The translations under genes and the position numbers were made by a program. Shown in pieces: positions 430 through 38,960 of a DNA stretch of 64,000 bases. Within the stretch, counting starts at the first letter, position 1; each line of letters begins with the position of its first letter. The stretch is taken from assembly GCA_965649765.1 (NCBI GenBank), contig OZ287750.1, positions 100,440,001 through 100,504,000 of the forward strand, given 5' to 3'. The notes below the pieces were generated by a model. It was not told the DNA's origin, made no database searches, and saw nothing but the letters and a program-made list of their open reading frames with translations. This stretch comes from Bispira polyomma. Its lineage: Eukaryota.

Positions 430-952
430 GGAATCGAGCTGATAACAGAATTGTAAGTTATTTGACTTATCTTTGCATTTAATGTTAGTTTTAGGTCATT
501 TTTCTAGAATTTCACCGTTACCATCTAAAATATCTATGATTTTGATATTGTACCCAAGTTTTGTATAGTACCCATCTGGAATATTACTAATTACAACATT
601 TGATTTTGACATGTCATGTGATACTTTGACACAGCCATTAGACATAACATTAGCTACAACACTTGATTTATTAGCAATATTATCTTTCATATTATTATTT
701 TTACAACTTATTGTACACATATGTTTGTTATAATTCTCATCGGGGTGTAACTGCTGCTTTTCAACAAATTTACGTACATTCATAGCAATTACATCACTGT
801 TCTCTTTACTCTTAACTATCTGACTGTTTATGCCAACACTGGTGCTTGTAATTTCCGTAATCACTCTTGTGGGTACACTTTCCGTTGTTATATAGCTTAC
901 ACGTCACCTTGTTATCACTGCTGCTAGAAGTCGCGTTCAAGGACTGTGTGTG
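430..952 (-). mobile_element. Ngaro-like YR retrotransposon, downstream half (gag zinc finger and start of pol), split by the Gypsy insertion
   Basis: Reads TQSLNATSSSSDNKVTCKLYNNGKCTHKSDYGNYKHQCWH, homologous to ICKLFNAGKCTNKSDHGQYRHICWH in ORF 45255-45497. Left boundary is approximate. Confidence 0.75.
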
Positions 953-1764
953 TGTTACATATGGGGACATTGTGGTGTGTGGAAGAAAAACCGGTCTAGT
1001 TAGTACTAATGGTTTTACACTCTGCTGGAGTGAGCTATTTATAGATTTGGGGAAACCCCTAAGCTTCTAGAAACCGGTTCTATTTTATTTCTGAAGGTTA
1101 TTAAAGTTGTATTCATATGTATATCTCATCTCTGGAATGTCCTAGCGATTGCTTACACATTCTAGCAACCTTCTCTAGCAGTGGTATATATAAGGGTTGA
1201 CAGCCTGGCCACAGAAGAGATTTAATTGAGCTGAGGTGCTATATGAATGCTATATGAACTACTATACTGTTTGTTATATACATTTTGTGGTGAACTCATT
1301 GGAGTGAACTAGATAAAAGTTGTGGATCTACCAGAGATTGGATTTACTGCATATTGGATATTGTTTGCATCCTGGACTGGATAGCTTAGTTGTGCAGATT
1401 CTCTGGATATATACATTTTGTGTGCGTGGACGCTGAACAGATAACAGGATACAGGCATTGTGTGGACATGGAGCGGATCTCAAGACAGATTGCTGGATAC
1501 AGTGGACAAACTGGTTTAATTGTTATTTAAGTGGACAGGACTGTGGTCAGGTCAGATTGATTTCATTATTATATTATTGTGTGAGCTATTAAGGGTATCT
1601 CAGTTGATTGTAATTTTGTAATTTTGTAATTTTATAATTCTGTAATTCTGTAGTTGTTATTTTATTTGTTAAATAAATTTGTTAAGTGAAACTTTTTGTC
1701 TTTTCCTGTTACAACCTCAAAGCAACCGGTAATTGCTACCGCGCTTGCTCCCGTCACCGTAACA
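953..1764 (+). repeat. 5' LTR
   Basis: 812 bp, identical by eye to 6730-7541. TATATATAA at 1185-1193 and AATAAA at 1672-1677. Confidence 0.96.
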
Positions 1765-1874: not shown

Positions 1875-4800
1875 ATGGCTAGTGCTAAAGAGTTTATACA
1901 GTCACCATCTATTGAGGTTCTAGAAACTTTTAAAAAAGATATGTTAATACAGATAGCACAGGAATTACAGTTAGATGTGAAAAAGTCAACACGTAAACAT
2001 GAACTTAAAAGGCTTATTGTTGAACAGTTAGTTGATGAAGACCTTTTGCATGATAGTTGTTTAGAAGTGTATAAACCTCTGCCAATGGAACCTTCTGGGC
2101 AATTTGAGATCAGGCGATTAGAAATTGAAAGAGAGCTAAAACTTAAAGAGCTTGAAGCTCAGCAACAACAGAGAAAAGAAGAGCTCGAAGCTCAAAGGAG
2201 AAAAGAAGAGCTTGAGCTTGAGGCTCAAAGGAGAAAAGAAGAGCTTGAGGCTCAAAGGCGAAAAGAAGAGCTTGAGCTTGAGGCTCAAAGGCGAAAAGAA
2301 GAGCTTGAGGCTCAAAGGCGAAAAGAAAAGCTTGAGCTTGAGGCTCAAAGGCGAAAAGAAGAGCTTGAGCTTGAGGCTCAAAGGCGAAAAGAAGAGCTCG
2401 AAGCTCAAAAATTTGAAAAAGAGCTTGAACTTAAACATGAAAGGGAAATGAAGGCTTTGGAACTCAATGCTCGCCGAATTGCCCATGAAGAGTTCATGGC
2501 AACCAAATTTGATTTGGGTAAAAATATGCGACTGGTACCACCTTTCAGCGAGTCCGAAGTTGATAAATATTTTCAACACTTTGAACGAGTGGCTCAAAAT
2601 TTGAAATGGCCCACAAACCAATGGCCTTTATTGCTGCAAAGTGTTTTCAAAGGCAAAGCCCAAGAGGCATATACAGCTTTGCCAATTTCTGAATGTAGAG
2701 ATTATGACTGTGTGAAAAATGCTATCTTGAAAGCATATGAGTTGGTACCAGAAGCATATCGTCAAAAATTCAGAAACTATCGTAAGCAAGAAAATCAAAC
2801 TTATGTTGAATTTGCCCATGAAAAAGAAGTGTACTTTGACAGATGGTGTAATTCTAGAGAGGTTGGTACAGATTTTGAAAAGCTGAGGCAAGTCATTTTA
2901 ATTGAGGAGTTCAAAAGGGGTGTTCGTGATGACATTAAAACCTATCTGGATGAACAGAAAGTAGAAAATTTGCAAAAAGCAGCAGCTTATGCTGATGATT
3001 ATGCACTGACTCACAAGTCCACTTTTAACAAGAGTAAATCCTCTGGTCCCACAAAGAAGTTTTATCCTGAAATAGGAAAGAAATTCGAAAATGTAGCTCC
3101 AGAAAAGAGTTCCGATAAGTTTCAAACAACAAATCAGACAATGAGTAAGGATAGGAAACCTAGGTCCTTTGCTCCTGTGTGCCATTACTGTAAAAAACCT
3201 GGGCATGTTATGTCTGACTGTTGGCTCCTTAAGAAAAGGAGAGAAAAGGAGGCAACACCGAATGCTTTTATTTCTAGCAAATCTAATTGGCGTTCAAATC
3301 CCAATAGAGCAGAATCTAGTATTGGTTTAGACAAGTCTGAGATTAGGGATGAGTTCAAACCTTTTGTGTCTGAGGGTTTTGTATCCTTAGAAAGTAGTTC
3401 CAGTCAAGTTCCCATTAGGATACTAAGAGACACTGGTGCTACTCAGTCACTACTTTTAGAAGGTGTATTGCCATTGAGTGTAAGCACTTCTACTGGTGAG
3501 AGTATTATTGCTCAAGGTATTGAAGGAGGTTGTGTAAACATTCCCTTACATAAGGTCAACTTAGTATCAGACTTAGTTACTGGTTCTGTTGTGGTGGGTA
3601 CCAGGCCCACTTTACCCATTAAAGGGGTGTCTTTGCTGTTGGGAAATGATTTGGCAGGTGGCAAGGTGGTTGCTGATCCTAAGGTTACTTCTAAGCCGAT
3701 CACTTTGGTTAGCACTGAGAAATTAGAAGAGGTTATTCCTGGTATTTTTCCCTCCTGTGCTGTGACTCGAGCTATGGCTAAAAAAGCCCAAGAAGAACCA
3801 AAAGATTGTAAACAATTTGCAGATGTCTTAGTTGATTTATCAGATACATTCTTAAACAACTGTGACCATGATGTGCAAAATCATAGTGAGATTGACCCTA
3901 AAGGTAGGAAAGATTCTGGGAAACAAGACCAATTTGATGATCCAGATGTATCACTCTCAAAATCCAAATTGATTGTAGAGCAGGAAAATGACCCTGAATT
4001 AGCCGCTCTATTCAAATTGGTGTTACCACCAGTAGAGCTAGATAAGGTCCCAGTAGGCTATTATATCAGAAATGGTGTGCTTATGCGAAAGTGGAGGCCG
4101 CCAAGTGTCCCTACCTCTGAGAACTGGTCAATACTTCATCAGATTGTATTACCAAAAATGTACCAAAATGATGTATTGAGGTTAGCTCATGAGTCTCCAA
4201 TGGGTGGCCATTTAGGCATCAACAAAACCTATGGCAAAATATCCAAGCATTTCTACTGGCCTCAAATCCGGCGCTGTGTGGCAGAATTTTGTAAAACTTG
4301 TCACATTTGTCAAATTGTAGGAAAACCAAACCAAAAAATTCCTGTAGCTCCTCTAAAACCCATTCCAGCATTTGAGGAACCATTCAGCAAAGTGATAATT
4401 GATTGTGTAGGCCCCTTACCAAAGACTAAATCCAGAAACCAATATCTCCTAACCATTATGTGTGCCTCAACCAGATTCCCTGAAGCCATACCTTTGACCA
4501 ACATAACAGCCCCGAAAATCTCAAAAGCTTTAGTCAATTTCTTTACTTTAGTTGGCTTACCAAAGGAGATCCAGTCAGATCAAGGGTCAAATTTTATGTC
4601 AGGATTATTTCAGCAAGTTGTGTTTCAGCTAGGTGCCAAACAGATCAAATCTAGTGCTTATCACCCAGAATCACAAGGTGCCCTTGAAAGGTTCCATTCC
4701 ACTTTAAAAAATATGATTAGGACATATTGCTTAGACAATGAGAAAGATTGGGATGAAGGCATCAACTTATTATTGTTTGCAGTTAGGGAATCAGTGCAAG

Positions 4801-6718: not shown

Positions 6719-6729
6719 AAGGGGGGAGG
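6719..6729 (+). promoter_or_regulatory. Polypurine tract
   Basis: AAGGGGGGAGG immediately precedes the 3' LTR. Confidence 0.9.
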
Positions 6730-7541
6730 TGTTACATATGGGGACATTGTGGTGTGTGGAAGAAAAACCGGTCTAGTTAGTACTAATGGTTTTACACTCT
6801 GCTGGAGTGAGCTATTTATAGATTTGGGGAAACCCCTAAGCTTCTAGAAACCGGTTCTATTTTATTTCTGAAGGTTATTAAAGTTGTATTCATATGTATA
6901 TCTCATCTCTGGAATGTCCTAGCGATTGCTTACACATTCTAGCAACCTTCTCTAGCAGTGGTATATATAAGGGTTGACAGCCTGGCCACAGAAGAGATTT
7001 AATTGAGCTGAGGTGCTATATGAATGCTATATGAACTACTATACTGTTTGTTATATACATTTTGTGGTGAACTCATTGGAGTGAACTAGATAAAAGTTGT
7101 GGATCTACCAGAGATTGGATTTACTGCATATTGGATATTGTTTGCATCCTGGACTGGATAGCTTAGTTGTGCAGATTCTCTGGATATATACATTTTGTGT
7201 GCGTGGACGCTGAACAGATAACAGGATACAGGCATTGTGTGGACATGGAGCGGATCTCAAGACAGATTGCTGGATACAGTGGACAAACTGGTTTAATTGT
7301 TATTTAAGTGGACAGGACTGTGGTCAGGTCAGATTGATTTCATTATTATATTATTGTGTGAGCTATTAAGGGTATCTCAGTTGATTGTAATTTTGTAATT
7401 TTGTAATTTTATAATTCTGTAATTCTGTAGTTGTTATTTTATTTGTTAAATAAATTTGTTAAGTGAAACTTTTTGTCTTTTCCTGTTACAACCTCAAAGC
7501 AACCGGTAATTGCTACCGCGCTTGCTCCCGTCACCGTAACA
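6730..7541 (+). repeat. 3' LTR
   Basis: 812 bp, identical by eye to 953-1764. Confidence 0.96.
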
Positions 7542-8290: not shown

Positions 8291-9535
8291 ATCAAATTCA
8301 TGTATAAAGTTTGTATGATTTCAAAAAAATAAATTACTCGTTGCTGCTTCAATCTCAGAATGAATATGGATGTCTGAACATACTGGAACTTGAAAAAGGT
8401 GGGAAGGTTCTGGCCTTCTGATTGGCTCATGCCCAGGATAGACAGATGGTAGTAAAATGTAGTTATAATGTTCAATTTTTAAGGTAGAATTAACATAAAG
8501 GTGTTGTGGACTGAAGTAGCAGGTTCCTAAAGTAACCTTGCTCACCATATTCAAGCTTGAATACAAGAACCCAGCTTTCAATACCAGGGCGGCACTACAG
8601 GAGGGATTCCGGGTCCATTCCAAGCCTATACCCAAAGTTAGGTATCATTCAGCGTAGAATTGTTTTTACGTAATAAAAGAAAAAATGCATACTTTTTTAA
8701 TTAAGGATACTATATATTAAAAGTTTAAAGCATTTGTACTCTGCTGTTCTCTTGTATCTATATTGCCAAGTATAATAATTATTATGCAGTTTAATAAGCC
8801 AAATCCTAAATGTTTTAGTTTGTATATTATTTTTTTGTCTGTAGCTCGATGTATATTAGACACATATTATGAAGTGTATTTGCTAGAGCTCCATTGGCTT
8901 GTCTATTTTGGTTGTAATGAAATGATTTGCTGAATTTAATTGGTAATATTTGTCTTGCAACCTTATATATTAATGAGTGCAAGAGAGATAAAACTAAACT
9001 TTAATATAACATGACATGGCTGTGTCTGTGATTCTGATTAGCTCAACGCTATGGTAAAAATACCTGTATACCTATGGTTCTTCCATTAATCTTCATATAC
9101 AAAACATTGACATGTTTCCTGTTGTTTTTGTTTACAACAGCAATTGTTATAAATGCTTATATAATATTTCTATTGACATAATATTTTGTTGCGTACTGTT
9201 TATTTGTTTTAATATGTTATTGTTATTTATTTAATTTTTTTTTCTTTAAATCACTATATTAGTTTTATGACTTCACAAGCCTACTACATAAATTTGATGG
9301 AAAAGCCAAGACTAATTTTCGTCTGTACTGTATTGAAAGCCCAGTGGATATATTTCTTTTATTGACATAATTTTGCAGTAAAATGAGCTGGAATCAGGTA
9401 ATAATTTTAATTTGTCATAATATAATGACAAAGCATGGTTTACAGTACATTTTACTTTGCCTTTATGTTACTACCCCTCCAACCCGGGAAATAATTGCCG
9501 TATACCATGCTTTGTCATAGGTTATTCCTATAATA

Positions 9536-10727
9536 AACTAGACCTAGCGCATCGGAGTACCGATGCTTATTTGTATCCACCAGAAAGACAGAGCACCCTA
9601 GGTAGGAAGCACCCAAACTATGGCTACCCTCATCTGACCTTGAAGGAGGGGCCAAGGTCAAATCTGACCAAATCAGAAGATTCTCAGCCCATGATTATTT
9701 ATAAGTTGGTTTCACATTGGAAACCTGTAGGACCAATAATAAGCGAGTTATAAGCACTTTTAAGTTTGTCTATTGTCATTTGTCCTTGAAGGAGGGGCCC
9801 AAGATCCTGACCACATCAGAAGAGTCCTAGTCCATGATTTCCTATAGGTTGGTTTTGCATCTTAAAACTGTAGGACCAATAATAAGCGAGTTATAAGCAC
9901 TGTTATGTTTAACTACCCTCGTCTGACCTTGATGGAGGAGCCCAAGGTCAAGTCTGACCACATCAGAAGATTCCCAGCCCATGATTACCTAAAAGTTGGT
10001 TTCACAATGCAAACCTCTAGGACCATTAATAAGCAAGTTATAAGCACTTTTAAGGTTGGATACCTTATTTGACCTTGAATAAGGGGCCCAAGGTCAAACC
10101 TGACCACATCAGAAGATTCCCAGCCCATGATTTCCTATAAATAGGCTTCACATGCCAACCTCTAGGACCAATAATAAGCGAGTTTTAAGCACTTTCAAGT
10201 TTGGATACCTTGTTTGACCTTGAATTAGGGGCCCAAGGTCAAACCTGACCACATCAGAAGATTCCGAGCCCATTATTTCCTATAGGTGGGCTTCCCATGC
10301 CAAACCTCTAGGACCAATAATAAGGGAGATATAGACACTAGTTTGCTATGTGGGGTACTTTGGCACTCCGTGGACGACCTTGAATGAAGAACTTCAAGGT
10401 CAAATGTCTGCATGCTTGTGGAGGACATATATATCTGTTATACATATCACCTATGGAGAGATTTAACCTTCTAGTTATAGGAACCAGCCAGTAGAAAAAG
10501 GTGGATAATTTTCAAAGAAATGCTGATGGCGGCCATCTTGTTTTTGAGTATAAGGGTTATTTTCAGTCGCAGAAAAGCTTACCTCCCAGTGAAGATATCC
10601 TGCAAATTAGGTGAAGCTAACTGGTCTTGCTTTCCACTGAGAGTTTAACGGCGAAAATCTCTCTGCGGCGACGAGGGCGGCATAGCAAGTGCTAAACCAA
10701 AGTATCCACCAGATCGGTGGATACAAT
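9536..10727 (-). mobile_element. Non-autonomous Helentron-type element (HINE/DINE-1-like) with an internal ~146-bp tandem array
   Basis: On the minus strand the 5' end has subTIR plus inverted copy (TTGTATCCACC-gatct-GGTGGATAC). The 3' end has subTIR GGTGGATACAA, hairpin GCATCGG-tact-CCGATGC and CTAG-TTT. About five repeat units start near 9635, 9781, 9924, 10070 and 10215. Confidence 0.8.
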
Positions 10728-12429: not shown

Positions 12430-13260
12430 AATTGAATCTTCATCAGAAATAAAGGAGACAGAAGAGAAAGCCAGTCTAAACTATAAATGTTGGATGACAC
12501 AGTTAGAGCTCATTGTGATCCACTCTCACATGTGATATACGCAATATTCACACTGACTCCTCACTTAACTGCTTTAGAAAGAAGCTCAAAACCATACTTT
12601 TTAGCAACACTTTTGAATCTTAGGCTCCTTTCCCATTTTTGTTGTCATGGCCCCTGTGCTTCCAATGGTTATATTAATTAAGAGAAAAAATTATCCTGTA
12701 TCATGCGTCTTACAATCCACTAGCATGGATATCAGAGCTATAAAAGTTAGGTTAGAAGAACTCTACATCTACTTGAACTGTTTAATAATTACAAACAAGT
12801 GATAAATGGCGATATTACAGTTAAAGAATTTAGAACAGGAAGGAAAATAAATCTTAATTGGAACATACAATAAACTGGAAATGACACTTCCTTACATTAG
12901 GTCATAATTTGTACACAAAAAGTTTTCATTTATATATACACAACATGCAGAAAAGAATTTTATCTACTGATTTACTGATTTAGTAATATAACAGGTGCTG
13001 ATACAAAGCATGAAAATAAGTGGTGGCCTTATTTGAAGGAGAGGAATGACTGAGACTGGTGTGGCTAATGTCAATGTCAATCTGTGCAGAAGTGAATAAT
13101 TCGATGGAAGAACTTACCGCTGTTGCATGTAGTACAATGAAACAAGATAGAGACAAAACTAAAGCAAGACAGGTCAGGGATTTGATGGATAAATGAAAAA
13201 ATCCATCTGTAGCAGATCCATGTTTATGTAACTAAGTGTACACTTATAAACTTTACCATA
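12430..13260 (-). repeat. Duplicated block downstream of vWA gene A (probable 3' UTR exons), paralogous to ~51460-52360
   Basis: Shared tracts such as gagctcattgtga.ccact.tcacatgtgat, tcataatttgtacacaaaa and actgagactggtgtggct. Confidence 0.75.
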
Positions 13261-13424
13261 CCAAAAAGACCTGTGTTAAATATAACTATGGAGACCAAAT
13301 GCAGGTACAGGTAATAGTTCTTTATTTTTGAATAAACAGACATTATTAATTAATAACACTTTGATGAATATGGTTAGTAAATTCAGTCTTGTATGCAACC
13401 TGTGTTTCATCCTCTCCTATTATG

Positions 13425-16400
13425 CTAGCGAGGACAAACTAAAAGAGAGAAAAAATAAATTAATTAATACATACACACAAAAATGACTTAAATACTTTAT
13501 AAATATTATGTTGTTCTTTAAATAGATCAGCTTTGTAAATGCATATTGTACAGCTGTTTTTAATTTAAGCAATACCACTAACCTTTCCCTGGTTTCTGAC
13601 ATAAAAGAATAATGTCCCAAATGTGATTGATGTCTTCTACAGTTAATACATTACTTGCTTTTCCACAGGCCATAATGAGTAGTTGTTTTGAGTCCACTTC
13701 TAAACCAAGTCCAATAACCAAAACCCTGTTAAAATTCAATTGGTTTTGTGGATTATATAAAATTAATCTTCAGTGAGGTCATTTTATGGATCATTTCAGT
13801 AGGACTACTCAGTGTCTTGGATTCTGACTGGTGTATCAGACTATATATCTACATAAACTATGAAATGAGAAGAACACATATAATCTATACTATAATTTAC
13901 TTATTCTATCATTTTCATCCCAAGCTATATTTGGAAATCTTTCAGTTCTTTACAATTACTTTTATTCATACATTCACGTAGCCGTGAAATATGACCTTTT
14001 GACGTGCGCCAATGAAAATGTATAGGAATTGTAGTGTAGAATTTAACCCATTTCTTTGCACAAAATATCACCAAAAATTAAACATATTATAAAATATCAA
14101 TCTAAAGCAATGTTAAAACATAAAATTCAAAGGCTGTTGATCTTCTTTCGACATATAATCTCTTTTATATACACAACCCTGGTTGTTTTACCACTATTTT
14201 AATTGTTTTACCATAAAAACTTACACCACTGCTAATTTATTTTGAGTTTTGTTATCTCAATAACTGTAAATCTGAGAATGCAACTGTAATTTTGCTATAC
14301 ATTATGATAAAAGGCCTTGTCGTAAATAAATGTTGTATACAGGTGACCTTTCTACACAGAGTCCGAGTTTTAGTAATTCATACTTACTTGCTACATCGAC
14401 ACAAGCGGTTGGAGGATGATATCAGTTTGCCCATATTTTCCATAGTCCTACTTGCTGTTATTATTATTGTCAAGGTAGGTGCCCTTTTTCTAGAAAAAAA
14501 TTGGTGCAAGATACAGTATCTTAAGTGAATTTTAGAGCTTAACTAGAATACCATGTGAAGCAGGGACTATGTACATCTATTGTGGTGAGCCACAGTAGTG
14601 AGAACAGGCATGATTATCTATGTAACCACTTATGAAAGGTGACATGCGAAGCTTCCAAAAGGAAAACACATCAGTTCAGCTGTCATTTTTGTACAGCATA
14701 CTGCTAAAGACAGTGGCCTCAAACATTACCCCAATCTGATATGTATTTAGTACACCACAGTTTTATAATAGAAAACAGATCTCCTGCCGCACTACCAGCC
14801 ATTCACATAGTGGCACCACAAAGAGGGTGACAAAAATTAGTATCACATACGCTGTCAGGTTGAATTATGACAAAAATACATTTATTAAAATGGCATACCA
14901 AAATTACAAATAACACTTCATTTTAAAAGCAACTGCTAAAAGATGCCATGTTAAGTTTTCAGTAAAATAAATATATTACTATAAAATTAAATAACATATA
15001 TTTTAAAATGTATTAGCATACTAATATCAATAGAATAGTAATATATATGTATATAAAAGTTTTATACTGAATTTGTATTTACCTGTTTGGTGGACTTCTA
15101 CAAAAAATTTTTTTAGCCTTTTTAAGAACTTTGGATAAACTACTAATTTTAGTTCCTATATATGGAACTGCCGCTATGCTACTGCCAAGATTAACATTAT
15201 TGGCTGTGCTTAGAGTTTGTAAATTCCAGTTAGACACTGCATTGTTGCCGAAGGTCATCACAGCCACCTAAAGTAATGTAAGCTTTATTAAAATGATATA
15301 TACTTTGTGTATGTGAGTGTAATGAATTAACATACCAGTGTACAGTTTGGGCAAACACAAGTAGTAATTGACTTATTTTGATTTTTTTTGAGTGAAAATT
15401 TAAGGAGTAAAAACATTAACTTAAGGCAGAACTTAACTGTCCACATACATTTAAGTAAAATGTTAAGAATATCGGTAACAAGCATTACATGTATAATGTG
15501 AACTAACTACATTTACAAACTTATGGAATGTTACTTCGAATTTGAGTGAAGTCAACAGAAAAGGTGAATTCAACCTAAAGTGAGACTTAGTAGGGCTCGT
15601 ACGTGATCAACCATAACTGGAAGGTGTTTTCACATGATTAAACCACCAAAGAGAGGATGTGTGCATTAAGATGATACTACAGATTAATCCTAGTGGAAGT
15701 TATAGATGACGAAAATAACAGAATGAGACCCACTGGGATTATACCTTATGAAAATAACAAGCAGAGGATTATACATAAATATGAAATAAACAGCCCATTG
15801 TAAAACAATAGGGAAATTCAGATTTTGGAGAGTAAAAGGGGCTTATTAAAATCAGATATTTAGGTAATAGATTGTAGAAGTTGTACTCATATTCCATGTA
15901 CAAATTAAAACATTGGTAGGTTACAGAAAGTTTAGTTATATAGCCGAAACGAAAATATTAGCACTTTCAACCCAGTACCTATATTGTCATATTCATAATA
16001 ATTAAATATTACTAAATTATTACCTGCACATTACACTTTTTAATCTTGAGGTCAGCAACCAAGTCCGACATAAACTGCTTTAGAACGATAAAGTCTATCA
16101 TGGTCATGGTGGAACTTGCATCAGAGATCAATAGGAGGTCTAATGCACCACCCAGAACTATTGTAGAAATACACAATCATAATACATTCACAAAATATTA
16201 TTGTTATATATTAGGCTGGGTCATGTACTTACTTTAACCTGTAACACATGTCACTTAAATACATAAATGCTTATATGGAGGTCATTATATGAGTAGGACT
16301 TTGATATTACTACTAAAAATCATTGTTAAAGTGTAGAAATAAATGTCAAAGCGTTAATATGTACACCGACTACTACTTTTAAATTTAAAAACGGAATGTG

Positions 16401-19400
16401 CATGTTCGAGAAGCTTGGTAAAACTTATTTTAGTCTTTTAATATGAATGACGGTACAGACACATTTATATTGTCTGCACTGCTTATATTTTTTGAAATGA
16501 CTATACATAATCTGAACTTACTGAAAAAAGCCTTTCCAAGAACACATTCATTAAAAAAACACCCATAGAGAGATGACATATAAAATTGATCTAGCAAAGA
16601 ACTGTGTAAGTTCAAAAGCTTTAACAATTTTCTTTTGTTTATTCTTATGATATATATATGCTTTTGTTGCCAGAGCAATTTCCAATAAGGTGGCATTGGT
16701 CATTCATCTGATCAAAGGCCATGACCTTGATGTCGCTCGCATGTCTGAGACATGGTTGTAAAGCAAGGACACCCTGATCTTTCCTTACTGAAACAACGCT
16801 TTCTGTCTCCAAATTGCTTTACTCCCTGGGCCTGATAGGAGCAGTGGTGGAGTTGGCTTATTTAATAAAACACCTTTTCTTGGGATGGTTTCAATGTCCA
16901 AAGCCCTTTGCATTATTCAAAAGTGTTAAATTTTCCTTCTGTATCAGCATTCGCCAAATATTTTTCAGAATTCCTAAAAACCCTCACTTATCTTAGGATT
17001 TATTTAGAGAGAAAGTAGTCAAAAATAGTGCTAATTGCCAAGTCTTATATATTTTCTTGTTCTAAAAATGAAAGAAGTCCAAATATAAAAGAATTTCAGC
17101 AGTACATCAACAAGATTTTCAATGATTTAGTTCTTCTTGCAAAAAGTAATCGCAAATATATAAACTTCTTTAGAAAGTGGTCGAGTTTTAAGCTTGTTGA
17201 TATTAATACATACCTAATTTATATGGAATACTAATATTGTTTCATTATATAAATAAGAGTACTGAATTGTTTTTTTTGTTTTTTTTTATTTATTGTTTTT
17301 TTATCACATGTGATTTTGTACACATCTTGTTTGTGCTACACTAATTGTGCATTGTAACAGTTCTGTACTTCAGAGCATCGTATTACTACTCCTTTTTTCG
17401 AGTTCAAAGAAACACGAGGGGATTATAGTAAGAGGCTATGCAATCTCTGGTGTCAAATTCAGCTTATCTGTCTTAAGTGAAATATCACTTTGTTTTTTTT
17501 TGTTCTGAGTTGCACAAGTAAAGTACAGTCTCTTAATTTGTTCAGATCAACTGGTTCGATAAGACACATGCAGTTGAGTTTATTAAGAGCAAATAGTAAC
17601 AGAACCAACAAAGATCTCTCATCATCCAATCCATAAACAAGCAAAAACCATGGCCAAGTGCAAACAACATTGGTCGAATCTGTATTCAAAAGGCATATCC
17701 TGTTAAGATATAATCGGTTTTCAATCATTTGTTTGGGTACCCATATTGGAATCATATTTGTTCATTACTAGTGCTCCCTATCTATCCTTTGAGCCCAACA
17801 AGGCGATACCTTAAATGTGTGGAGATGATCCCATGACACAGGTACCAAGGCTACACCAGCAGTATACTCAAAATCTATATATATAAATATCTGCAATTTA
17901 CTTACAATATGTCTACTGAAGTTGAAAACATTTACCGTATCTCTTTTTTGCAATATTAAAAATTAATAAATTTTCGCCTTTTTATACAGTTATTGATCAT
18001 TTTGTCTTTTTATTGGCCAATTGTCCATTTTAACCTTGCTACTATAGTATATTAGTACAATATAATTACATATCTCCTTACCTCATTTATATTGGGGGCC
18101 GCGGTGGCCTAGTCGTTAGCAAGCATTGCGCTTCACAATGACTGGTCTCTAACCTCTGGGCGGCGTGAGTTTGAATCCTGTCAATGTCTATGTGAGAAAG
18201 GTGGTAGTTCCTTACTGTGGGCCGCTGGTTTCAGTGCAGAACTTTGATCAACTGTATGCAGTGTTTCCTCCACCGTTTCCAACTACCCGTCCCAATGTAA
18301 CCTAAACATCCTTGTTTTTATTTAATTTGCTGTTAGGGCAACAGAACCCCACTCACAGCATTTGGAAACCACCACTTTTTACAAACATCCAACGTTTATA
18401 AAACCATGGATAAATGAATCCCTCAACAACCTAAACTGTGCCACCTGTTCTCTGTGCGCACAACTTCGTTACCCATTCGTTTTTATAGAAATAACAGTTT
18501 CTTTGAGTCTCTGCTACTCACCCTTGTTGGTTACATCATTTTGAACCCTGGTCCAACTAATGGAACTATTGGTCCTTCTCGATGCCAGATGAAGATAGTT
18601 GGCATCAATATTCAATCAATCCGGAACAAGGATCAATTCTTTTTCGACCTAACAGAGTCAATAAAACTTGACATTGCCTGTCTAAAACCTGGCTCACCAT
18701 CGAAGACACATTTTTTACAGAATTTACCCCAATGGTTATAAACCATTCCATCAACATAGACTTCATGGACGTGGTGGTGTTTGAATCTTTGTGAGGGATT
18801 GCTTTGCAGCTCAAGCTGTGGAAGTTCTGGCAACTATGACTTTTGAGGTTCACTCTCGAGGTTTTTTACTACTTTCACTAATTTGTTGTTGCCTTGTTGT
18901 ATCATCCTCCATGTTTTTCTAGCCGGGAGGAATTTCTGGCTGAATTCACACAATTCCTAGAGACCCTTAGTCTACTTCTAGATGAATGCCTCATCTTTGG
19001 TGATTTTAACATAAAAGTGAACATGAATGAGACCATTTTAATTCAAAAGTCAAGTGATCAACATGATTCTACAAAGAATAATAAATATTGCAAATTTACT
19101 TAGGGCTGTAATTGCCCACATACAATCACAACTGGTGGTTATTATGGATCAAGGGCAGGATAAGAAGATTACGAAAGCAAAGGGAAGCAATGAACCTACA
19201 GCTTCAGGCTCCGACAAGGGCGGCCAGAAGAGGAAGAGCAAGGCCAATGTTGTGAACAACCTGGCTCAGGGAAAGGGAGGAAGATAGACACTACACAGCG
19301 CTTGAGATCAGGATACAGAGACACACCACAAGGTACAGGAAGACACTGCCCCCTGGAATCAAGATAGCCATAACTTTGAGGCGTTTGGCTACTGGGGAGT

Positions 19401-21287
19401 CCTACACATTGTTGCAGTACTTGTTCGTAGTGGGCAAGTCAACCATGACAAAGTCTGTGCCAGAAATTTGCCAGGCCATCATCAACAAGTCTCAAGAAGA
19501 ATTCCTCACATGCCCCACCAGCCCCAACAACTGGAAGAAGGCCCTGGAGGCAATAGACAGCAAACACATTGAGATGCCCCAGCAAAGGTGGGAGCGAGTA
19601 CTTCAACTACAAGGGGTACCACTCAATTGTCATGCATGCCCAGGTGACACCTGTCAGGCCTCAGTCAACAATCCAGGTGAGGGCTGAATACGTCATGGCA
19701 GTCTTTGTTGGGGTTGCTGGGGTTGCTGGTACATGACCTGCGGTGGTTGCTGTTGAGGTACAATCTCAGGTGGAACCATCTGGTATTGCATCTGGGGTTG
19801 TGCCTGACACTGCTGATCATGCTGGCACTATGGCACTGCTTGTGGCCATCCGGTCCTGGATAGCGTTCACAAAGTTGAATGCCTCCCTTCTGAAGTGGTT
19901 GAAATGCTCATCTGGCAATATTTCGTCCTCTAAATTTTAACCAGTTGAGAAATGCCGACTTGGGTCCCTCAGCCTTGGCCTCATTAAAGAAGCCTGAGAT
20001 TGTGTCCTGCATTGTGGCCAGCGTATCACTCAGCTCACTAGAAAGTGCTGCCTCAGGATTCGCAGTTGATCTGATACAGAATAAAGACTGTTTTGAGGCA
20101 CTCCCAGGGGATACTATCAGCAAAAAAGACTCCATCTCTGTTTCAGCACGTCGGTCTATGTCTAAATGGGACCCCACCCTGGGAGGTGCTAATTCTGCTA
20201 GAGGCATGTACAAAGAGGTGGATGCGATGGGTCTGAAGCCAGCTGCTCTCGAGACATGTCGTATGATGTGAGGTTTCAAAAGGTCATAGGTGTTCTTGAC
20301 CCATTGCTGTCTGTCTGTCAAATCAGCTGGTGCCTGGCCGAACTTCCTGGTGTCCAGCTTGCCATAGATAGTACTCTGTGATTGAAACCACTTCTTCATT
20401 TCTTCCTCAGGCGGCTTCCCAAAATACGGCGCCGACCAATATGATTTGCACCCGAGTTATCTTTTGACAACCTGATGTATCATTTCACTCCCCTATCCTA
20501 TCTTTTGTTCTCCCAAGTTATCTTTTCGATCGGCTGGCACCAACGACTTACCATCTGTATGGCCCCACCTATCTTTTTAATCTAGGCTTCCCTAACGACT
20601 TATCATTTGTTTCAAAATCTATCTTTTCAATCAGAGGATCTCTTTTTGACACATGACATGATAACTAAGGGGTTGAAAGAGAACTCGTAATGGCCCCCGA
20701 CCTATCTATGTTTAGGGAAAATAAGTAAGGATGACTTTTAACATGTTTGGAAACCTCTGTGACCTCCCCAATTGGAAATGATAAGTCGTTAGAAGCCCCC
20801 AGACGTCCCGATAATTGCCCCTATCTTTTAATCGTAATGATTGGTGGCTATGATCGGCATAGTGGAACATGGGTATATACCTCAAATAACTATTAGGTAT
20901 ACACAATACACATGCTATATACCACTGGTATGCCCTTATTTCTAAATACACTTTTGGACATGTATTGCTCAAATAACTACCACATTTATATAGTACACAT
21001 GACTAATACCACTGGAAACCAATTGTGACCAATACAACTTTACCATCAACATATTTAGTGTTACCAGTTATATAGCTTAATTTAGTACAAAATATATAAA
21101 AAATTATAGTTAAATTGTTGCGCATCAGAATCGGCTACTATGTAGATTAAGTGTCTGAAGGAGTGTCTTTAGATTAGATTAAATTACATTTTTAAGAGCC
21201 ACTGTTTGACAGAGGAACATATTATTATTACACACACTTACCACTGGGAGTGCAAATCAGAGATAAAAACAGTATCATAAATTTCAT
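13425..21287 (-). CDS. Secreted single von Willebrand A-domain protein, paralog A (207 aa, 6 coding exons)
   Basis: Exons 21287-21242, 16157-16024, 15267-15083, 14489-14388, 13725-13583 and 13438-13425 are all GT-AG and phase-compatible. Protein: MKFMILFLSLICTPSVLG-GALDLLLISDASSTMTMIDFIVLKQFMSDLVADLKIKKCNVQVAVMTFG...PNRKRAPTLTIIITAS...KVLVIGLGLEVDSKQLLIMACG...CQKPGKVCPR*. This follows the vWA strand/helix pattern. Exon lengths match paralog B except exon 4 (102 vs 99 nt) and the short stop exon. Confidence 0.85.
17028..17234 (+). mobile_element. Tx1/L1-like LINE 3' fragment in intron 1 of gene A
   Basis: LIAKSYIFSC...P....F......F.RKW resembles the extreme ORF2 C-terminus of Tx1-like elements. 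Confidence 0.5.
18094..18308 (+). mobile_element. tRNA-derived SINE
   Basis: Box A-like GGTGGCCTAGTCG and box B-like GAGTTTGAATCC. The body is homologous to 34797-35045. Confidence 0.8.
18500..19040 (+). mobile_element. Degenerate L2/CR1-group APE endonuclease fragment
   Basis: GYIILNPGP...INIQSIRNK...LYHPP...CLIFGDFNI. Smaller related scraps lie near 16700-16900 and 22030-22170. Confidence 0.65.
19100..20410. mobile_element. PIF/Harbinger relic: transposase (+) and convergent Myb/SANT-like ORF (-)
   Basis: + strand TLRRLATGESY...VGKST...CQAI...AIDSKHI...FNYKGYHSIV. - strand KWFQSQSTIYGKL...LTDRQQWV...LLKPHI. Confidence 0.75.
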
Positions 21288-23189
21288 ATTTATCTCATTT
21301 CATATTTATCTCATGTTGTCTCACTGTTCTGTTGGCTGAATACTTTACACAGAGACTACTACTTTTAACAACATAATTTGCAGGTTGAGAAAGCTTATAA
21401 CACTTACAACATTCTTTTAAAATGATAGAACCACTGAGACAGTTCTATTATCTGCACCACTAATATATTTTGAAGGGACTAAGGAAAGACTAAACCTATT
21501 GAAAGCCTTTCAGAACAGAACACAAAGAAAGAAAGAAAGAAAGAAAGAACGCAAGAAATCAAACACAGAATGAGCAGGTTAAGCTTAATACATCTTTTAT
21601 TCTTTAAAAGTATTGATTGCAGTGAGACATGTTTATTGTTTGCAGTTATACCTTTTGAAAGAACAACACACAGTCTGAACTTATCCTTTTTAAAAACACA
21701 TTAATCAAACAAAAACAACCACAGAGAAATGACGTATGTACCATCCCCATTTCAAAGAATATAGCTTTGCAGACACTTTGATTCATTAAACAGGCGTATG
21801 AGTAACAAAGCAATCAATCATTGTCTAAAGTGTGTGACCACAAACTCAAAAGCTTCAGCAATTTGTTTTATTTATTTTCATGATCTATTAAAACTAGAGT
21901 CAGTTGAGTGAAATCAATGTAATATAATGGAAATTGTTGTGATAGAGTGACTGTTATCTTCAGCTTGTTGTTTAATTAAATGTTTCATAGCACAACATTG
22001 CTTCAATTTGACAACATTAAAAAATCATTAGCCCTGGTCTTCTCTCAACCAAAAACAAAATTGGTGCTTTTAATGCCAGATCAATTCGCCATAAGATGCC
22101 ATCAGTCATTTATCTGATTGAAACCCATGACCTTGATGTGACTTTCATATCTGATACATTGTGGTGAATCAAGGACATTTCAAAGCCAAGAAAGAATCAC
22201 TCCAGTTATAAAACTCAATGCATAGAATACTCTACCGTACTTCAAGGTTTGTCTGATAGTTACTGTCTCACAATATATGGCTTTTCAACAATGTCTCATT
22301 GTGCCCACCATCTATGGGTTACAAAGTTTCTAATCTATCAAATACTGTGAACCAGATCCTATCCCTGTCATTGTTCTGATGGAATGTCTCGTTCTGATAA
22401 CTCCTATTACCAATATTATTAAATATTAAAAGGGATAGTATTGGATTATATTTTACAGATGAAATTATCGTATAATCCTATAAAATATTGAAGTTCATTT
22501 GATGACATATTTTACTACATATTATTGGGTAAACTTCAAAATAATGGTTTTGAGCTTTAACAAAATGGAATATGTTATTGCAGATGGAGCCAGGTGGAGC
22601 AATATCATATTCAAGAACGAAATGATAGGTTTCATGACTGGCTAAGTGAAAGAGTGTAGTACTATTTTGGTTTAAAAATAAAAGTGGGCAGAGCTTATAT
22701 CTAAAAATTGGTAAACCACAGATGCGAGATAAACCAACAGACAGAAATGACAACTTGGCAGTACAGAATATAACAAAATGTGACTGAAGGGAACCGTGGA
22801 CAGAGCTATAATCCCAATAATATTATAGTTCCGATACTGTACTGAACATTATTTCACAGCTAACGAAAAATGGGCGAAAAATGGCCATTGAAAAAAAAAA
22901 GACATCCAGTAAACCACAGTCGTTAGTTAAGGTACTGAGGAGAAATTTCTAATAAAACAAAAAAAAATGGTGCATTGAGTTTTGAATATGTGGTGGCAGT
23001 GAGTCTTTTAAAGGCAGTTTAAGTGTAATATATCAATTCAATCCTTTGATCGACTTTTTTGCATATATGTTTACTATTCACACAGTTTTTTTTTTTTTTT
23101 TATTAATAAATCTCCAATTAAAAGTCTAAAACAGTAGGGTTCATTTGATAGAGCTTATTATTAGGACACACATTACATTGAGCTTGCCA

Positions 23190-28678: not shown

Positions 28679-30393
28679 GACAGTTGCTGAAATCAACCTT
28701 TACCAAAACTGACGTCATGCTTCAAAACAATACCTATATGTGTGTGTCATGGCAAGTTAAAACGAGGTATACGATATATATATACTCTAAAATCTGTGAA
28801 GATAAAATTAAAATAAACTAAATAGTTTGTGACTATTAAGGTGATATAGTATAGATATTATCATAATTCAGTTTGGATTTTTAATTTTTAATACTCCCAT
28901 ATTCATCATTTTTATAGAATGTGATATTTAGTTTCTGAACCCACAAATCCCAGACCTGCTACGCACACGTGCATTGACAACACCCAGATCTTCAGCCAAT
29001 CCCATCATGCCTAAGATAAAATTATAGTGGTCGCCATATTTGATCATTGTTTACAACAATTTATAGATTGGTCAATAGATATCGTTGTCACAGACCGTTG
29101 TAATATTATTTTACAGCTATAAACTACAATTTCGAAAGCTACTGGGACAATATTGAATCTTATGAAAAGCCCAATATTCGCTGATTAGTTATTGAAATCG
29201 ACCCAAAAAAAATCTCGGAGCACAAGAGCCCAAAGTCTATACTCATTGCGAATTTGAGATCATTCCTACCAGTTCTGAAAGGTACTTGTTCCTATCTAAG
29301 ATATCAGAACTTAAGTAATAGAACCCAATGGTTGTGCATGCGCAAACGTCTGGTTAAAAAGTACTCTAGCCATCATGACAAAAATCGGTCTACCCCATCC
29401 CAAAAAATACATGTACCAAATATGTAGCAAAACTTCCAAAGATTTGCCTGTCACCATGTGTTGCTAAGGGGGACTGATCCACAGAATTTCTTTCAGGTAA
29501 AATGGACATAATGGAAAAAAAAACCATTTATATTATTGAATGGAACAAAACACAGCTTTTAGAAAAAACATAAAAGTTACTGGATTTGGATGAACAAAAA
29601 TTCAAAATTTGCCCATATTTTGTAAGTAACCACAACTAATCTTTTTGTTGTCTGAAGGCTCTGATTTATATTTATATTACTATTTTTGGCATTTGTAAAA
29701 AATTCAAGAATCTCTACTGTGCTAAGCTTATCAATTCAAAATAATTAATAATTTGTCACCCAATATAATTGACATAATAGGTTGTAACACATACCGTTCA
29801 ACTTTTACTTCACAACTAGGCTATTTACTGTTACTTAATGGCGGACTATATATATATTACAGCAAATGCACTACAAAAGTAAACCAACTAAATTCAAATC
29901 CACATTGATTATTTTTAAATACAAATAAAAGGGGAAATAATATTTCCAATATACATATAAAATACGAATATTTATTGCTTCAAATCAAAGTAAACTGTAC
30001 CTGAACATTAATGCAAAAGTGGTGGTATATAATAAATGCACACCCTATCTTTAATGTGACCATGACCTACAATTTGATTCAGCAACAGAATAAATAATTC
30101 AGTAATATATAAATATTGTATCATAGGATTCCTACCTAGATACTTCCCATATTATTAAATAAAATTTGTAACTTTCTGATCTGTGTTGCTCTAATGACTA
30201 TACAAAATATATAGAAAATATACGTAGATTGTGGGGCCTTAGAATCTGCTGCTTTGTAGATAGATTATTTGCCTGAAGAAGTCTCATTAGATTTGATTTA
30301 CCATTCCAAAAGCAACTGCTACACAGAGGTACATATAGTTATTACTGTTATTTGTTCAATTGGTCTAAGGCAAAATAACAACAAAAAACTTAC

Positions 30394-30439
30394 CGTTGGA
30401 TGCGCAAAGCAGAGCTATAAACACTATCATAGATTTCAT
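30394..30439 (-). CDS. Third copy of the signal-peptide exon (MKSMIVFIALLCASN), downstream partner uncertain
   Basis: 46-nt phase-1 exon with a GTAAGT donor, the same length as exon 1 of both vWA genes. The flanking intron and upstream sequence are homologous to 21190-21370 and 63830-63970. Confidence 0.65.
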
Positions 30440-38578: not shown

Positions 38579-38960
38579 AACTCATTATCATAATAAAATC
38601 CCCCTATAATGCCCAATACATATCAGAACAAACTACTGCATGGGTATTTGGAATGCTCTATAGTTTTATAGGTGGAGCCTACACAAAAAATACAGACATG
38701 CCCCATTTATGCTGACACACCGTAGGCTAGATAAAGTAATAAGAAAACATGCATAGCAGAACACACTGTAACTCATTATCATAATAAAATCCCCCTATAA
38801 TGCCCAATACATATCAGAACAAACTACTGCATGGGTATTTGGAATGCTCTATAGTTTTATAGGTGGAGCCTACACAAAAAATACAGACATGCCCCATTTA
38901 TGCTGACACACCGTAGGCTAGATAAAGTAATAAGAAAACATGCATAGCAGAACACACTGT
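38579..38960. repeat. Near-perfect tandem duplication of ~191 bp
   Basis: aactcattatcataataaaatcccc...gcagaacacactgt occurs twice; the only difference seen is one extra C in a homopolymer. Confidence 0.92.

What the first reader, a model, noticed from the sequence alone, without database searches (positions are those of the whole stretch)
15083..15267. Coding exons diverge faster than neighbouring introns between paralogs
By hand count, the last 43 codons of exon 3 share about 73/129 nt (~57%) with 59948-60132, with no indels or stops; the whole exon is about 27/62 identical in amino acids. Adjacent intron blocks look much closer (14910-14985 vs 59790-59865, about 80-85% by eye, and a 30-nt identical run at 13803/58611). 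The signal exon is also well conserved. This pattern is the established signature of diversifying selection in conotoxins, snake PLA2 and abalone lysin. Changes concentrate in helices while core strands (VAVMTFG, VLVIG) are fixed.
Basis: partly seen in the sequence, partly recalled or inferred. Interest (0 to 1): 0.8.

Follow-up and report, generated by a model that had tools for sequence, protein, structure and literature searches.

The report
Fast-evolving secreted VWA gene pair
Two neighbouring copies of a small secreted adhesion-type (VWA) gene really do differ more in their exons than in their introns. Silent sites differ as much as amino-acid-changing ones, so adaptive diversification is possible but not shown.

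Summary
The last 129 nt of exon 3 are 74/129 identical, the exon is 26/61 identical in amino acids with no indel or stop, and a 30-nt identical intron run exists.

The gene is on the minus strand and encodes a signal peptide plus one VWA domain. A tiny last exon follows.

Between copies A and B:
- All alignable intron sequence gives K=0.285 (CI 0.24-0.33).
- The domain exons give dN=0.405, dS=0.48 and omega=0.84.

Exons therefore exceed introns, but dN does not exceed dS. The excess sits at third codon positions.

Both reading frames have clearly been kept by selection. The predicted core strands are 71% identical and the rest 40%.

Adjacent segments of the three closest copies support different trees, so introns are an unsafe neutral yardstick here. 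Site models favour positive selection in two other exons but not in exon 3. That support disappears once silent-rate variation is allowed.

Verdict: a real, milder case of the snake-PLA2-type pattern in a birth-and-death VWA cluster. Diversifying selection is unproven.

This scan had noted other secreted VWA clusters elsewhere in this genome.

The parts
21242..21287 (-). Copy A exon 1: start codon and signal peptide (15 codons plus 1 nt), GTAAGT donor
   Evidence: A, B and an orphan copy C align here.
16024..16157 (-). Copy A exon 2 (134 nt): VWA strand A with a DxSxS-like motif, then helix 1
   Evidence: Pfam PF00092 profile positions 1-37. PDB profile hits to collagen VI, vWF A1 and mussel PTMP1.
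15083..15267 (-). Copy A exon 3 (185 nt), the finding itself: conserved strands B and C, then a very divergent helical part
14388..14489 (-).
   Evidence: Conserved in 13 paralogs.
13583..13725 (-).
   Evidence: For copy B, Pfam profile positions 134-172.
13425..13438 (-). Copy A exon 6, coding part: three and a half codons with a conserved Cys-Pro, then the stop; 3' UTR extent unknown
   Evidence: The acceptor and first codons are conserved in six copies.
63924..63969 (-). Copy B exon 1 (signal peptide)
61622..61755 (-). Copy B exon 2
   Evidence: (Pfam VWA 25.5 bits, above the 23.8 cut-off)
59948..60132 (-). Copy B exon 3, partner of the finding
59249..59347 (-). Copy B exon 4 (99 nt), the missed exon; differs from A by two in-frame indels
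58395..58537 (-). Copy B exon 5
58255..58265 (-). Copy B exon 6, coding part with stop
13726..14387 (-). Copy A intron between exons 4 and 5 (3b): 77.3% identical to B, holds the 30-nt identical run
14490..15082 (-).
20876..22212 (-). Copy A conserved 5' cassette: about 0.9 kb upstream, exon 1 and the first ~340 nt of intron 1 (76-87% identical to B)
60406..61416 (.). 145-bp satellite array inside intron 2 of copy B; the reason intron 2 does not align with A

Best explanation
The finding is exon 3 of a six-exon, minus-strand gene. The gene encodes a secreted protein of about 205 residues: a signal peptide followed by one von Willebrand A (VWA) domain whose metal-site motif is incomplete.

Copy A and copy B, 45 kb apart, belong to a birth-and-death cluster of at least seven copies on this chromosome. 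The cluster includes one frameshifted pseudogene and one orphan first exon. A second cluster lies on another chromosome.

Since A and B split, their domain exons have changed at about or slightly above the rate of the neighbouring introns. Replacement and silent sites have changed about equally (omega 0.84 for the pair, 0.95 over five paralogs).

Both genes are still kept by selection. There are no stops or frameshifts, the only indels are in frame, and the core strands and cysteines are conserved.

I read this as functional duplicates in which the fold is held while helices and loops are almost free to change. Some sites may be pushed to change.

The locus has a mosaic, partly homogenised non-coding history, so introns understate the neutral divergence of the exons.

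Shown: the gene model, the rates, the retained frames and the conflicting trees. Inferred: secretion, the fold assignment of each exon, and the cause of the dS-over-intron excess.
For: - VWA assignment: Pfam on exons 2 and 5 at matching profile ends. A PDB profile of exon 2 hits collagen VI, vWF A1 and mussel PTMP1. The missed exon restores a domain length of about 175 residues.
- Rates: Ki=0.285 (0.24-0.33), dN=0.405 (0.33-0.49), dS=0.48 (0.34-0.68), P(dN>dS)=0.20. A simulation shows MAFFT does not underestimate K.
- The excess over composition-corrected non-coding rates is at codon position 3 only.
- Frames are retained. P(no stop) is about 3% per lineage at K=0.2 (7% at K=0.145) and P(no frameshift) is 0.002 under neutrality. 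The related copy L041 did decay.
- Strands versus the rest: 71% against 40% identity.
- Mosaic history: three-taxon site patterns differ between introns 3a+3b and the region after exon 5 (p=6.5e-8), and between introns and exons (p=7e-5). Intron divergence is heterogeneous, 14-40 differences per 100 nt, p=5e-4.
- Five-paralog M0 omega is 0.95-0.98, not different from 1.
Against: - Plain M1a/M2a tests favour a class with omega of 4-7. Pooled p=2e-7, exon 2 p=0.008, exon 5 p=0.004.
- A branch-site test on the A and B tips gives pooled p=0.02.
- dN exceeds the intron rate with 99.5% bootstrap support. If introns are the true neutral rate, the non-core sites evolve about 1.5 times faster than neutral.
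- The young trio L038-L040 has omega 1.07-1.5.
- I found no tract that directly proves conversion of the A-B introns themselves.
- Four-fold sites in conserved codons (6/30 differ) look like the introns, so dS may be overestimated.
Confidence: 0.55

Rival explanations
1. One reading: diversifying (positive) selection on amino acids drives the exon divergence, as in venom PLA2, conotoxins and abalone lysin. Introns show the true, lower neutral rate.
For: - dN 0.405 exceeds Ki 0.285 with P=0.995. In the last 43 codons of exon 3, dN is 0.64.
- The signal exon and 5' cassette are conserved.
- Changes avoid the core strands.
- Plain M2a vs M1a is significant when pooled and in exons 2 and 5.
- The branch-site test on A+B gives p=0.02.
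- A-B exon 3 is less alike in protein (26/61) than either copy is to the sister subfamily (29-30/61), whose introns no longer align.
Against: - dN<dS: omega is 0.84, and 0.94 in the chosen segment.
- The excess is at third codon positions, not at positions 1 and 2.
- Exon 3 alone is not significant, and no exon is once site-rate classes are allowed. Summed over exons p=0.67; on one tree p=0.09.
- Conflicting trees among segments are known to inflate such tests.
- By the yardstick used for snake SSP genes, KA/KS of 0.62-0.65 with intron KN of 0.31-0.33 is called neutral (PMC6609765).
Confidence: 0.3
2. The exons carry a locally raised mutation rate or an older coalescence than the introns, so silent and replacement sites both outrun the introns without selection on the protein.
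For: - dS 0.48 exceeds Ki 0.285 (P=0.995).
- Third positions are 0.388 against 0.252 expected.
- Two-fold silent sites differ at 10/30, against an intron transition share of 0.115.
Against: - In the sister trio, dS (0.10-0.11) is below Ki (0.15-0.24), so a raised exon mutation rate is not a property of the family.
- Four-fold sites differ at 6/30, no higher than introns.
- No closer donor for B's exon 3 exists in the genome.
Confidence: 0.1
3. One or both copies are decaying pseudogenes, and the exon divergence is simply neutral drift.
For: - Omega is near 1.
- No RNA run is available.
- Pseudogenes exist in the family: L041, and two copies on C10 with stops.
Against: - There are no stops or frameshifts in about 183 aligned codons of either copy.
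- Neutral simulation gives 3-7% per lineage for no stop and 0.002 for no frameshift.
- The only indels are in frame.
- Splice sites are intact.
- Strands and cysteines are conserved.
Confidence: 0.03
4. The intron similarity comes from a shared transposable element, not from common descent of the introns.
For: A piece of about 70 nt in the intron (around A 14134-14204) has a few 79-85% matches on other chromosomes.
Against: Genome-wide, the whole 1357-nt stretch matches only copies A, B and the pseudogene L041. The alignment is collinear from exon 3 to the 3' flank.
Confidence: 0.01

Closest known systems
Crotaline snake venom PLA2 isozyme genes and habu small serum protein (SSP) genes ('accelerated evolution': exons more diverged than introns)
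   Same: - Tandem paralogs of a small secreted protein.
- Signal exon and introns more alike than the mature-protein exons.
- KA close to KS, and both above the intron rate.
- Ki/dS is about 0.6 here.
- The method and yardstick are as in PMC6609765.
   Different: - The effect is milder here: exon/intron about 1.4-1.7. From my own recollection, introns are about one quarter of KS in PLA2.
- KA/KS is 0.84, not 1 or more.
- The scaffold is a VWA domain, not a toxin fold.
- The tissue is unknown.
- There is clear mosaic history among the copies.
Conotoxin superfamilies and abalone lysin/sp18 (hypervariable mature region behind a conserved signal; replacement rate above the intron rate)
   Same: - Conserved signal and 5' part, with a divergent mature part.
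- dN above the intron rate. The lysin precedent is Metz et al. 1998, seen only as a reference title in PMC9022041.
   Different: - Lysin and sp18 show dN/dS>1 (PMC9022041). Here dN/dS is below 1 for the pair.
- The comparison here is between paralogs in one genome, not between species.
VWA (von Willebrand factor type A, Pfam PF00092) domains of collagen VI, vWF A1 and mussel byssal PTMP1
   Same: - Exon 2 matches the first 37 profile positions and exon 5 the last 39.
- The exon-2 profile finds these solved domains.
- With the missed exon, the domain length is about 175 residues.
   Different: - This is a single domain with a signal peptide only, about 205 residues.
- The strand-D loop lacks the metal-site Asp, and the DxSxS motif is degenerate in several copies.
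- Pfam and the PDB do not recognise exon 3 on its own.

Membership tests
VWA domain (Pfam PF00092) | Match to the family profile at or above the curated score | tested here: met
   Copy B exon 2 alone scores 25.5 bits against a cut-off of 23.8, at profile positions 1-35. Copy B exon 5 scores 18.3 bits at positions 134-172. Copy A exon 2 scores 15.3 bits, below the cut-off. The spliced protein was not searched, by rule, so for copy A the membership rests on its paralogy with B.
VWA domain (Pfam PF00092) | Full-length domain (about 174 profile positions) with alternating strands and helices, including strand D and helix 4 | tested here: met
   Exons 2, 3 and 5 alone leave about 35 positions missing. 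The newly found exon 4 (33-34 codons) fills that gap, keeps the frame, and is conserved in 13 paralogs. The strand and helix labels are inferred from homology, not from a model.
VWA domain (Pfam PF00092) | Three-dimensional Rossmann-like VWA fold | not tested
   Atlas feature hits for exon 3 are all in the VWA clan but score below 0.9.
Metal-dependent (MIDAS) adhesion VWA/I-domains | Complete MIDAS: DxSxS, a Thr after helix 2-3, and an Asp in the strand-D loop | tested here: not met
   The first motif reads D-x-S-x-T in copy A and D-x-S-x-K in copy B. The strand-D loop has T-x-S where Asp is expected, in all 13 copies. The identity of the MIDAS residues rests on general knowledge of VWA domains.
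Gene families under diversifying selection (PLA2 / conotoxin / lysin type) | Exon divergence above intron divergence, with a conserved signal region | tested here: met
   Exon p-distance is 0.32 against 0.24 for non-coding. dN 0.405 exceeds Ki 0.285. Exon 1 and the start of intron 1 give K=0.17-0.20.
Gene families under diversifying selection (PLA2 / conotoxin / lysin type) | dN/dS above 1 in the mature region | tested here: not met
   For A-B, omega is 0.84 with P(dN>dS)=0.20. The last 43 codons of exon 3 give 0.94. Five-paralog M0 gives 0.95. The young trio gives 1.07-1.5, with Fisher p of 0.2-0.56.
Gene families under diversifying selection (PLA2 / conotoxin / lysin type) | Site models support a class with omega>1, robustly | tested here: inconclusive
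   Plain M2a vs M1a gives pooled p=2e-7, exon 2 p=0.008, exon 3 p=0.10, exon 4 p=0.58 and exon 5 p=0.004. With site-rate classes the pooled p is 0.09 and every exon is non-significant. The code is my own, with five taxa, a long internal branch and recombination present.
Gene families under diversifying selection (PLA2 / conotoxin / lysin type) | Excess change at amino-acid-determining positions rather than at silent ones | tested here: not met
   Against composition-corrected non-coding rates: position 1 is 0.309 vs 0.263 (p=0.11), position 2 is 0.270 vs 0.247 (p=0.29), and position 3 is 0.388 vs 0.252 (p=1e-4).
Gene families under diversifying selection (PLA2 / conotoxin / lysin type) | Expression in a specialised secretory, reproductive or immune tissue | not testable with these tools
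   No RNA run holds the stretch. The three DNA runs are identical to the reference.

The most novel reading that the evidence does not exclude
An invertebrate uses the VWA fold as a hypervariable secreted scaffold. In this reading, a tandem repertoire has a conserved promoter and signal cassette and conserved introns. Its domain exons are driven apart after each duplication, at silent and replacement sites alike. That is the unexplained PLA2/conotoxin pattern on a new fold, and it would point to an exon-directed mutational or anti-homogenisation mechanism serving recognition, defence or adhesion.
Probability: 0.15. Interest if true: 0.75.

Novelty: new member of a known kind. Interest (0 to 1): 0.4.

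Why it matters
Exons that outrun their own introns are rare. They are the classical pointer to arms-race proteins such as venoms, gamete recognition proteins and immune receptors. A VWA-domain family with this pattern would add a new fold to that list and flag a candidate recognition or adhesion repertoire in an invertebrate.

The case also carries a warning. Here the pattern is real, yet silent sites share it and the locus is a recombinant mosaic. The intron-versus-exon contrast alone is therefore not proof of adaptive diversification.

The corrected six-exon model matters for anyone annotating this family.

Tried and rejected
- Pfam on exon 3 and on the new exon alone gave no hit.
- A PDB profile of exon 3 gave only a spurious repeat match to Photorhabdus PLL lectins. 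A profile of exon 5 gave only E of about 0.9 to integrin I-domains.
- The ESM Atlas on exon 3 gave VWA-clan leads only, all below 0.9.
- Sequencing runs: no RNA run was found. Three DNA runs from one study are identical to the window, so there is no allele or polymorphism information and no splice evidence.
- A search for a closer donor of B's exon 3 in the genome found none.
- A shared TE as the cause of intron similarity is rejected.
- Alignment bias as the cause of the low intron K is rejected by simulation.
- Pseudogene decay of A or B is rejected.
- Biopython YN00 failed on several exon pairs. I used NG86 (my own code and Biopython's) and GY94 ML instead.
- A global alignment of intron 2 was meaningless because of the satellite in B. 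Local alignment recovers only about 255 homologous nt.
I re-ran it by reference.
- Left out by rule: any search or fold of the joined (spliced) protein, including whole-protein Pfam, structure prediction and mapping of variable sites on a model. In scripts I only pooled codon columns of separate exons for counting.
- The large protein search (search of protein representatives) and the word search were not used. The family scans had already settled the domain, and an exon-length query cannot reach full-length relatives.
Full report
**What is at the coordinates.** The finding lies on the minus strand. Positions 15267..15083 form an exon of 185 nt (61 codons plus 2 nt). It is bounded by an AG acceptor and a GTAAAT donor. 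Positions 60132..59948 are its paralog, with the same length and phase.

The window is C3:100440001-100504000 of a 1.035-Gb eukaryotic genome. A self-comparison shows collinear homology between about 13229-15353 and 58039-60220. Further blocks lie around exon 2 and around the first exon.

- The last 129 nt of the exon are 74/129 identical and the first 56 nt are 45/56.
- The protein identity is 26/61, with no indel or stop.
- The picked intron block is 66/75 identical once a 1-nt register shift is allowed.
- The 30-nt identical run is at 13803/58610.
- The signal exon is 38/46 nt and 11/15 aa identical.

**The gene and its family.**
- Exon 2 matches the first 35-37 positions of Pfam VWA (PF00092). 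Copy B scores 25.5 bits, above the curated cut-off of 23.8. Copy A scores 15.3 bits.
- A profile of exon 2 from nine paralogs finds the VWA domains of collagen VI, vWF A1 and the mussel byssal protein PTMP1 among solved structures.
- Exon 3 alone is not recognised by Pfam or by a PDB profile, whose only hits are spurious. Its ESM Atlas neighbours are all VWA-clan, though below 0.9.

Exons 2, 3 and the VLVIG exon together left about 35 profile positions unaccounted for.

It is there: A 14489..14388 (102 nt) and B 59347..59249 (99 nt). It has a polypyrimidine tract, an AG acceptor and a GTAAGT donor. It enters and leaves in phase 2, so the frame into the next exon is kept. Its peptide is found in every paralog I looked at, with five invariant residues in 13 copies. 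It supplies the missing strand D and helix 4.

The exon after it ends at a donor conserved in six copies, not at the stop. A tiny last exon adds Val-Cys-Pro(-Arg) and the stop.

The true model therefore has six exons. They encode a signal peptide plus one VWA domain, about 205 residues in all. The metal-site motif is incomplete.

Every search was made exon by exon, by reference.

**The wider family.** Own-genome searches show at least seven copies on C3 between 100.36 and 100.55 Mb. A second cluster lies on C10 at 2.70-3.02 Mb, and there are single copies elsewhere.

By intron homology, the C3 copies fall into two clades:
- A, B and L041
- L038, L039 and L040

L041 is a pseudogene, with frameshifts in exons 2 and 3. 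Two copies on C10 carry stops. An orphan first exon with its 5' cassette lies at 30394-30439.

**The unbiased comparison.** After removing the missed exon, introns 3a and 3b align over 1191 nt at 76.3% identity. That gives K=0.285, with a block-bootstrap interval of 0.24-0.33. The stretch after exon 5 gives K=0.335. The start of intron 1 gives K=0.166. The about 255 homologous nt left in intron 2 give about 0.24 and 0.45.

The rest of introns 1 and 2 cannot be aligned. The cause is insertions, among them a 145-bp satellite in B.

Two possible artefacts were checked and excluded:
- A simulation with the observed indel spectrum shows that the aligner does not underestimate K.
- The intron is not a repeat. 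Genome-wide it matches only A, B and L041, apart from a piece of about 70 nt.

The four domain exons (183 aligned codons, 87 identical residues) give dN=0.405 (0.33-0.49), dS=0.48 (0.34-0.68) and omega=0.84. The bootstrap gives P(dN>Ki)=0.995, P(dS>Ki)=0.995 and P(dN>dS)=0.20.

The last 43 codons of exon 3 give dN 0.64, dS 0.68 and omega 0.94. The first 18 codons give omega 0.33.

**Where the excess sits.** I compared each codon position with the rate expected from the non-coding sequence, corrected for base composition.

| Codon position | Observed | Expected | p |
|---|---|---|---|
| 1 | 0.309 | 0.263 | 0.11 |
| 2 | 0.270 | 0.247 | 0.29 |
| 3 | 0.388 | 0.252 | 1e-4 |

The surplus of exon over intron divergence is thus carried mainly by the mostly silent position. 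That is not what selection for amino-acid change predicts.

Clean four-fold sites (6/30 differ) look like the introns. Two-fold sites (10/30) are higher than the intron transition share. The silent rate in the exons therefore lies somewhere between 1 and 1.7 times the intron rate. Omega measured against a "true" neutral rate lies between about 0.8 and 1.4.

**Both genes are kept by selection.** Neutral simulation from either sequence gives 3-7% for no stop per lineage. The indel rate of the intron gives 0.002 for no frameshift in 461 nt. Neither copy has a stop or a frameshift. The only indels, in B's exon 4, are in frame. All splice sites are intact.

Identity is 32/45 in the putative core strands against 55/138 elsewhere (p=3e-4). 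The strand assignment is my own, from homology.

**Mosaic history.** I used the pseudogene L041 as a third taxon and counted site patterns in each segment.

| Segment | Sites unique to L041 | Unique to B | Unique to A |
|---|---|---|---|
| Introns 3a+3b | 165 | 109 | 86 |
| After exon 5 | 18 | 24 | 48 |
| Exons | 49 | 69 | 65 |

In the introns A and B are nearest. After exon 5, B and L041 are nearest, and the two tables differ at p=6.5e-8. The exons differ from the introns at p=7e-5.

Adjacent segments therefore have different trees, which means that gene conversion or chimeric duplication has occurred. Intron divergence is itself heterogeneous, at 14-40 differences per 100 nt (p=5e-4).

In the sister trio the picture is reversed for exon 3. 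There dN is 0.044-0.059 and dS is 0.05-0.075, against an intron K of 0.15-0.24. Exons 2 and 5 are the fast ones, and omega is 1.07-1.5, not significant.

The contrast between exon 3 and its introns is thus not a family-wide property. Silent rates are not generally raised in the exons of this family.

**Site models.** I wrote GY94-type M0, M1a, M2a and branch-site likelihoods and fitted them to five paralogs (A, B, L038-L040).

M0 omega is 0.95-0.98 and is not different from 1.

| Data | Plain M2a vs M1a, p | With three site-rate classes, p |
|---|---|---|
| All four exons, one tree | 2e-7 | 0.09 |
| Exon 2 | 0.008 | 0.16 |
| Exon 3 | 0.10 | 1.0 |
| Exon 4 | 0.58 | 0.96 |
| Exon 5 | 0.004 | 0.35 |
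| Summed over exons, own trees | 8e-4 | 0.67 |

The site-rate classes scale silent and replacement rates together. A branch-site test with A and B as foreground gives pooled p=0.02 and exon 3 p=0.075.

There are only five taxa, a long internal branch and demonstrated recombination. I treat these results as suggestive only.

**Comparison with what is known.** The pattern of a conserved signal exon and conserved introns, with KA about equal to KS and both above the intron rate, is that described for crotaline PLA2 genes.

The workers who use that test call a pair "accelerated" when KA/KS is about 1 or more. They call pairs with KA/KS of 0.62-0.65 and intron KN of 0.31-0.33 "neutral" (PMC6609765). 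The A-B pair (0.84 and 0.285) lies between these.

Lysin and sp18 show dN/dS>1 (PMC9022041). The lysin intron paper (Metz et al. 1998) could only be seen as a cited title.

**Verdict.** The gene model needed an extra exon.

These are functional, very weakly constrained or partly positively selected duplicates in a recombining birth-and-death cluster. The introns are not a safe neutral yardstick here.

The case is a new, milder member of a known kind of pattern, on a VWA scaffold. Expression, alleles and orthologs could not be examined.

Noticed in passing
window 30201-30645 (first exon 30394-30439, minus strand): A third, orphan copy of the promoter, signal-exon and start-of-intron-1 cassette, 67-74% identical to A and B. 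No exons 2-6 were found downstream in the window by tblastn. It was already noted by another first-stage entry.
   Followed up: partly
window 9525-10545 and 60406-61416: Arrays of a satellite of about 145 bp. One lies about 2.7 kb beyond the 3' end of the homology in copy A. The other lies inside intron 2 of copy B, where it replaces most of the homologous intron.
   Followed up: partly
L041 (C3:100514500-100524499), exons at 5190-5056, 4364-4182, about 3574-3473, 3057-2915: A pseudogene of the same clade as A and B. It has a 1-nt insertion in exon 2 and a net -2 nt in exon 3, while exons 4 and 5 are still open. Its 3' part is closer to B (K=0.19) than to A.
   Followed up: yes
L039 around 3003-3006 (C3:100399500-100409499): The acceptor of exon 5 reads CAAG where the other copies have CAGG. 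This would shift the frame if the AG is used, so the copy may be non-functional.
   Followed up: no
window 15083-15110 and 14388-14400 (copy A): Copy A alone has two extra cysteines. One replaces the family's nearly invariant Trp at the end of exon 3 and one lies at the end of exon 4. Copy A has also lost the N-x-T sequon of exon 4. This may be a new disulfide, which is speculation.
   Followed up: no
window 952-1251 and 6729-7028: Two 300-nt direct repeats, 100% identical and 5.8 kb apart, together with duplicated microsatellite blocks. This looks like a young LTR element and was noted by another first-stage entry.
   Followed up: no
window 18000-20400 (inside intron 1 of copy A): A GC-richer insert (44% GC) with long ORFs on both strands, for example 163 aa at 19908-20399. 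A 210-nt piece is repeated at 34796-35003. It is probably a transposable element and accounts for A's long intron 1.
   Followed up: no
window 38579-38960: A perfect tandem duplication of a 191-nt unit.
   Followed up: no
G000 C10:2.70-3.02 Mb (L006, L008, L009, L012, L014-L017, L019): A second cluster of the same family, with exons 3 and 4 recognisable. Two copies have in-frame stops. Exon 5 was not found within 1.5 kb, so the gene structure may differ.
   Followed up: partly
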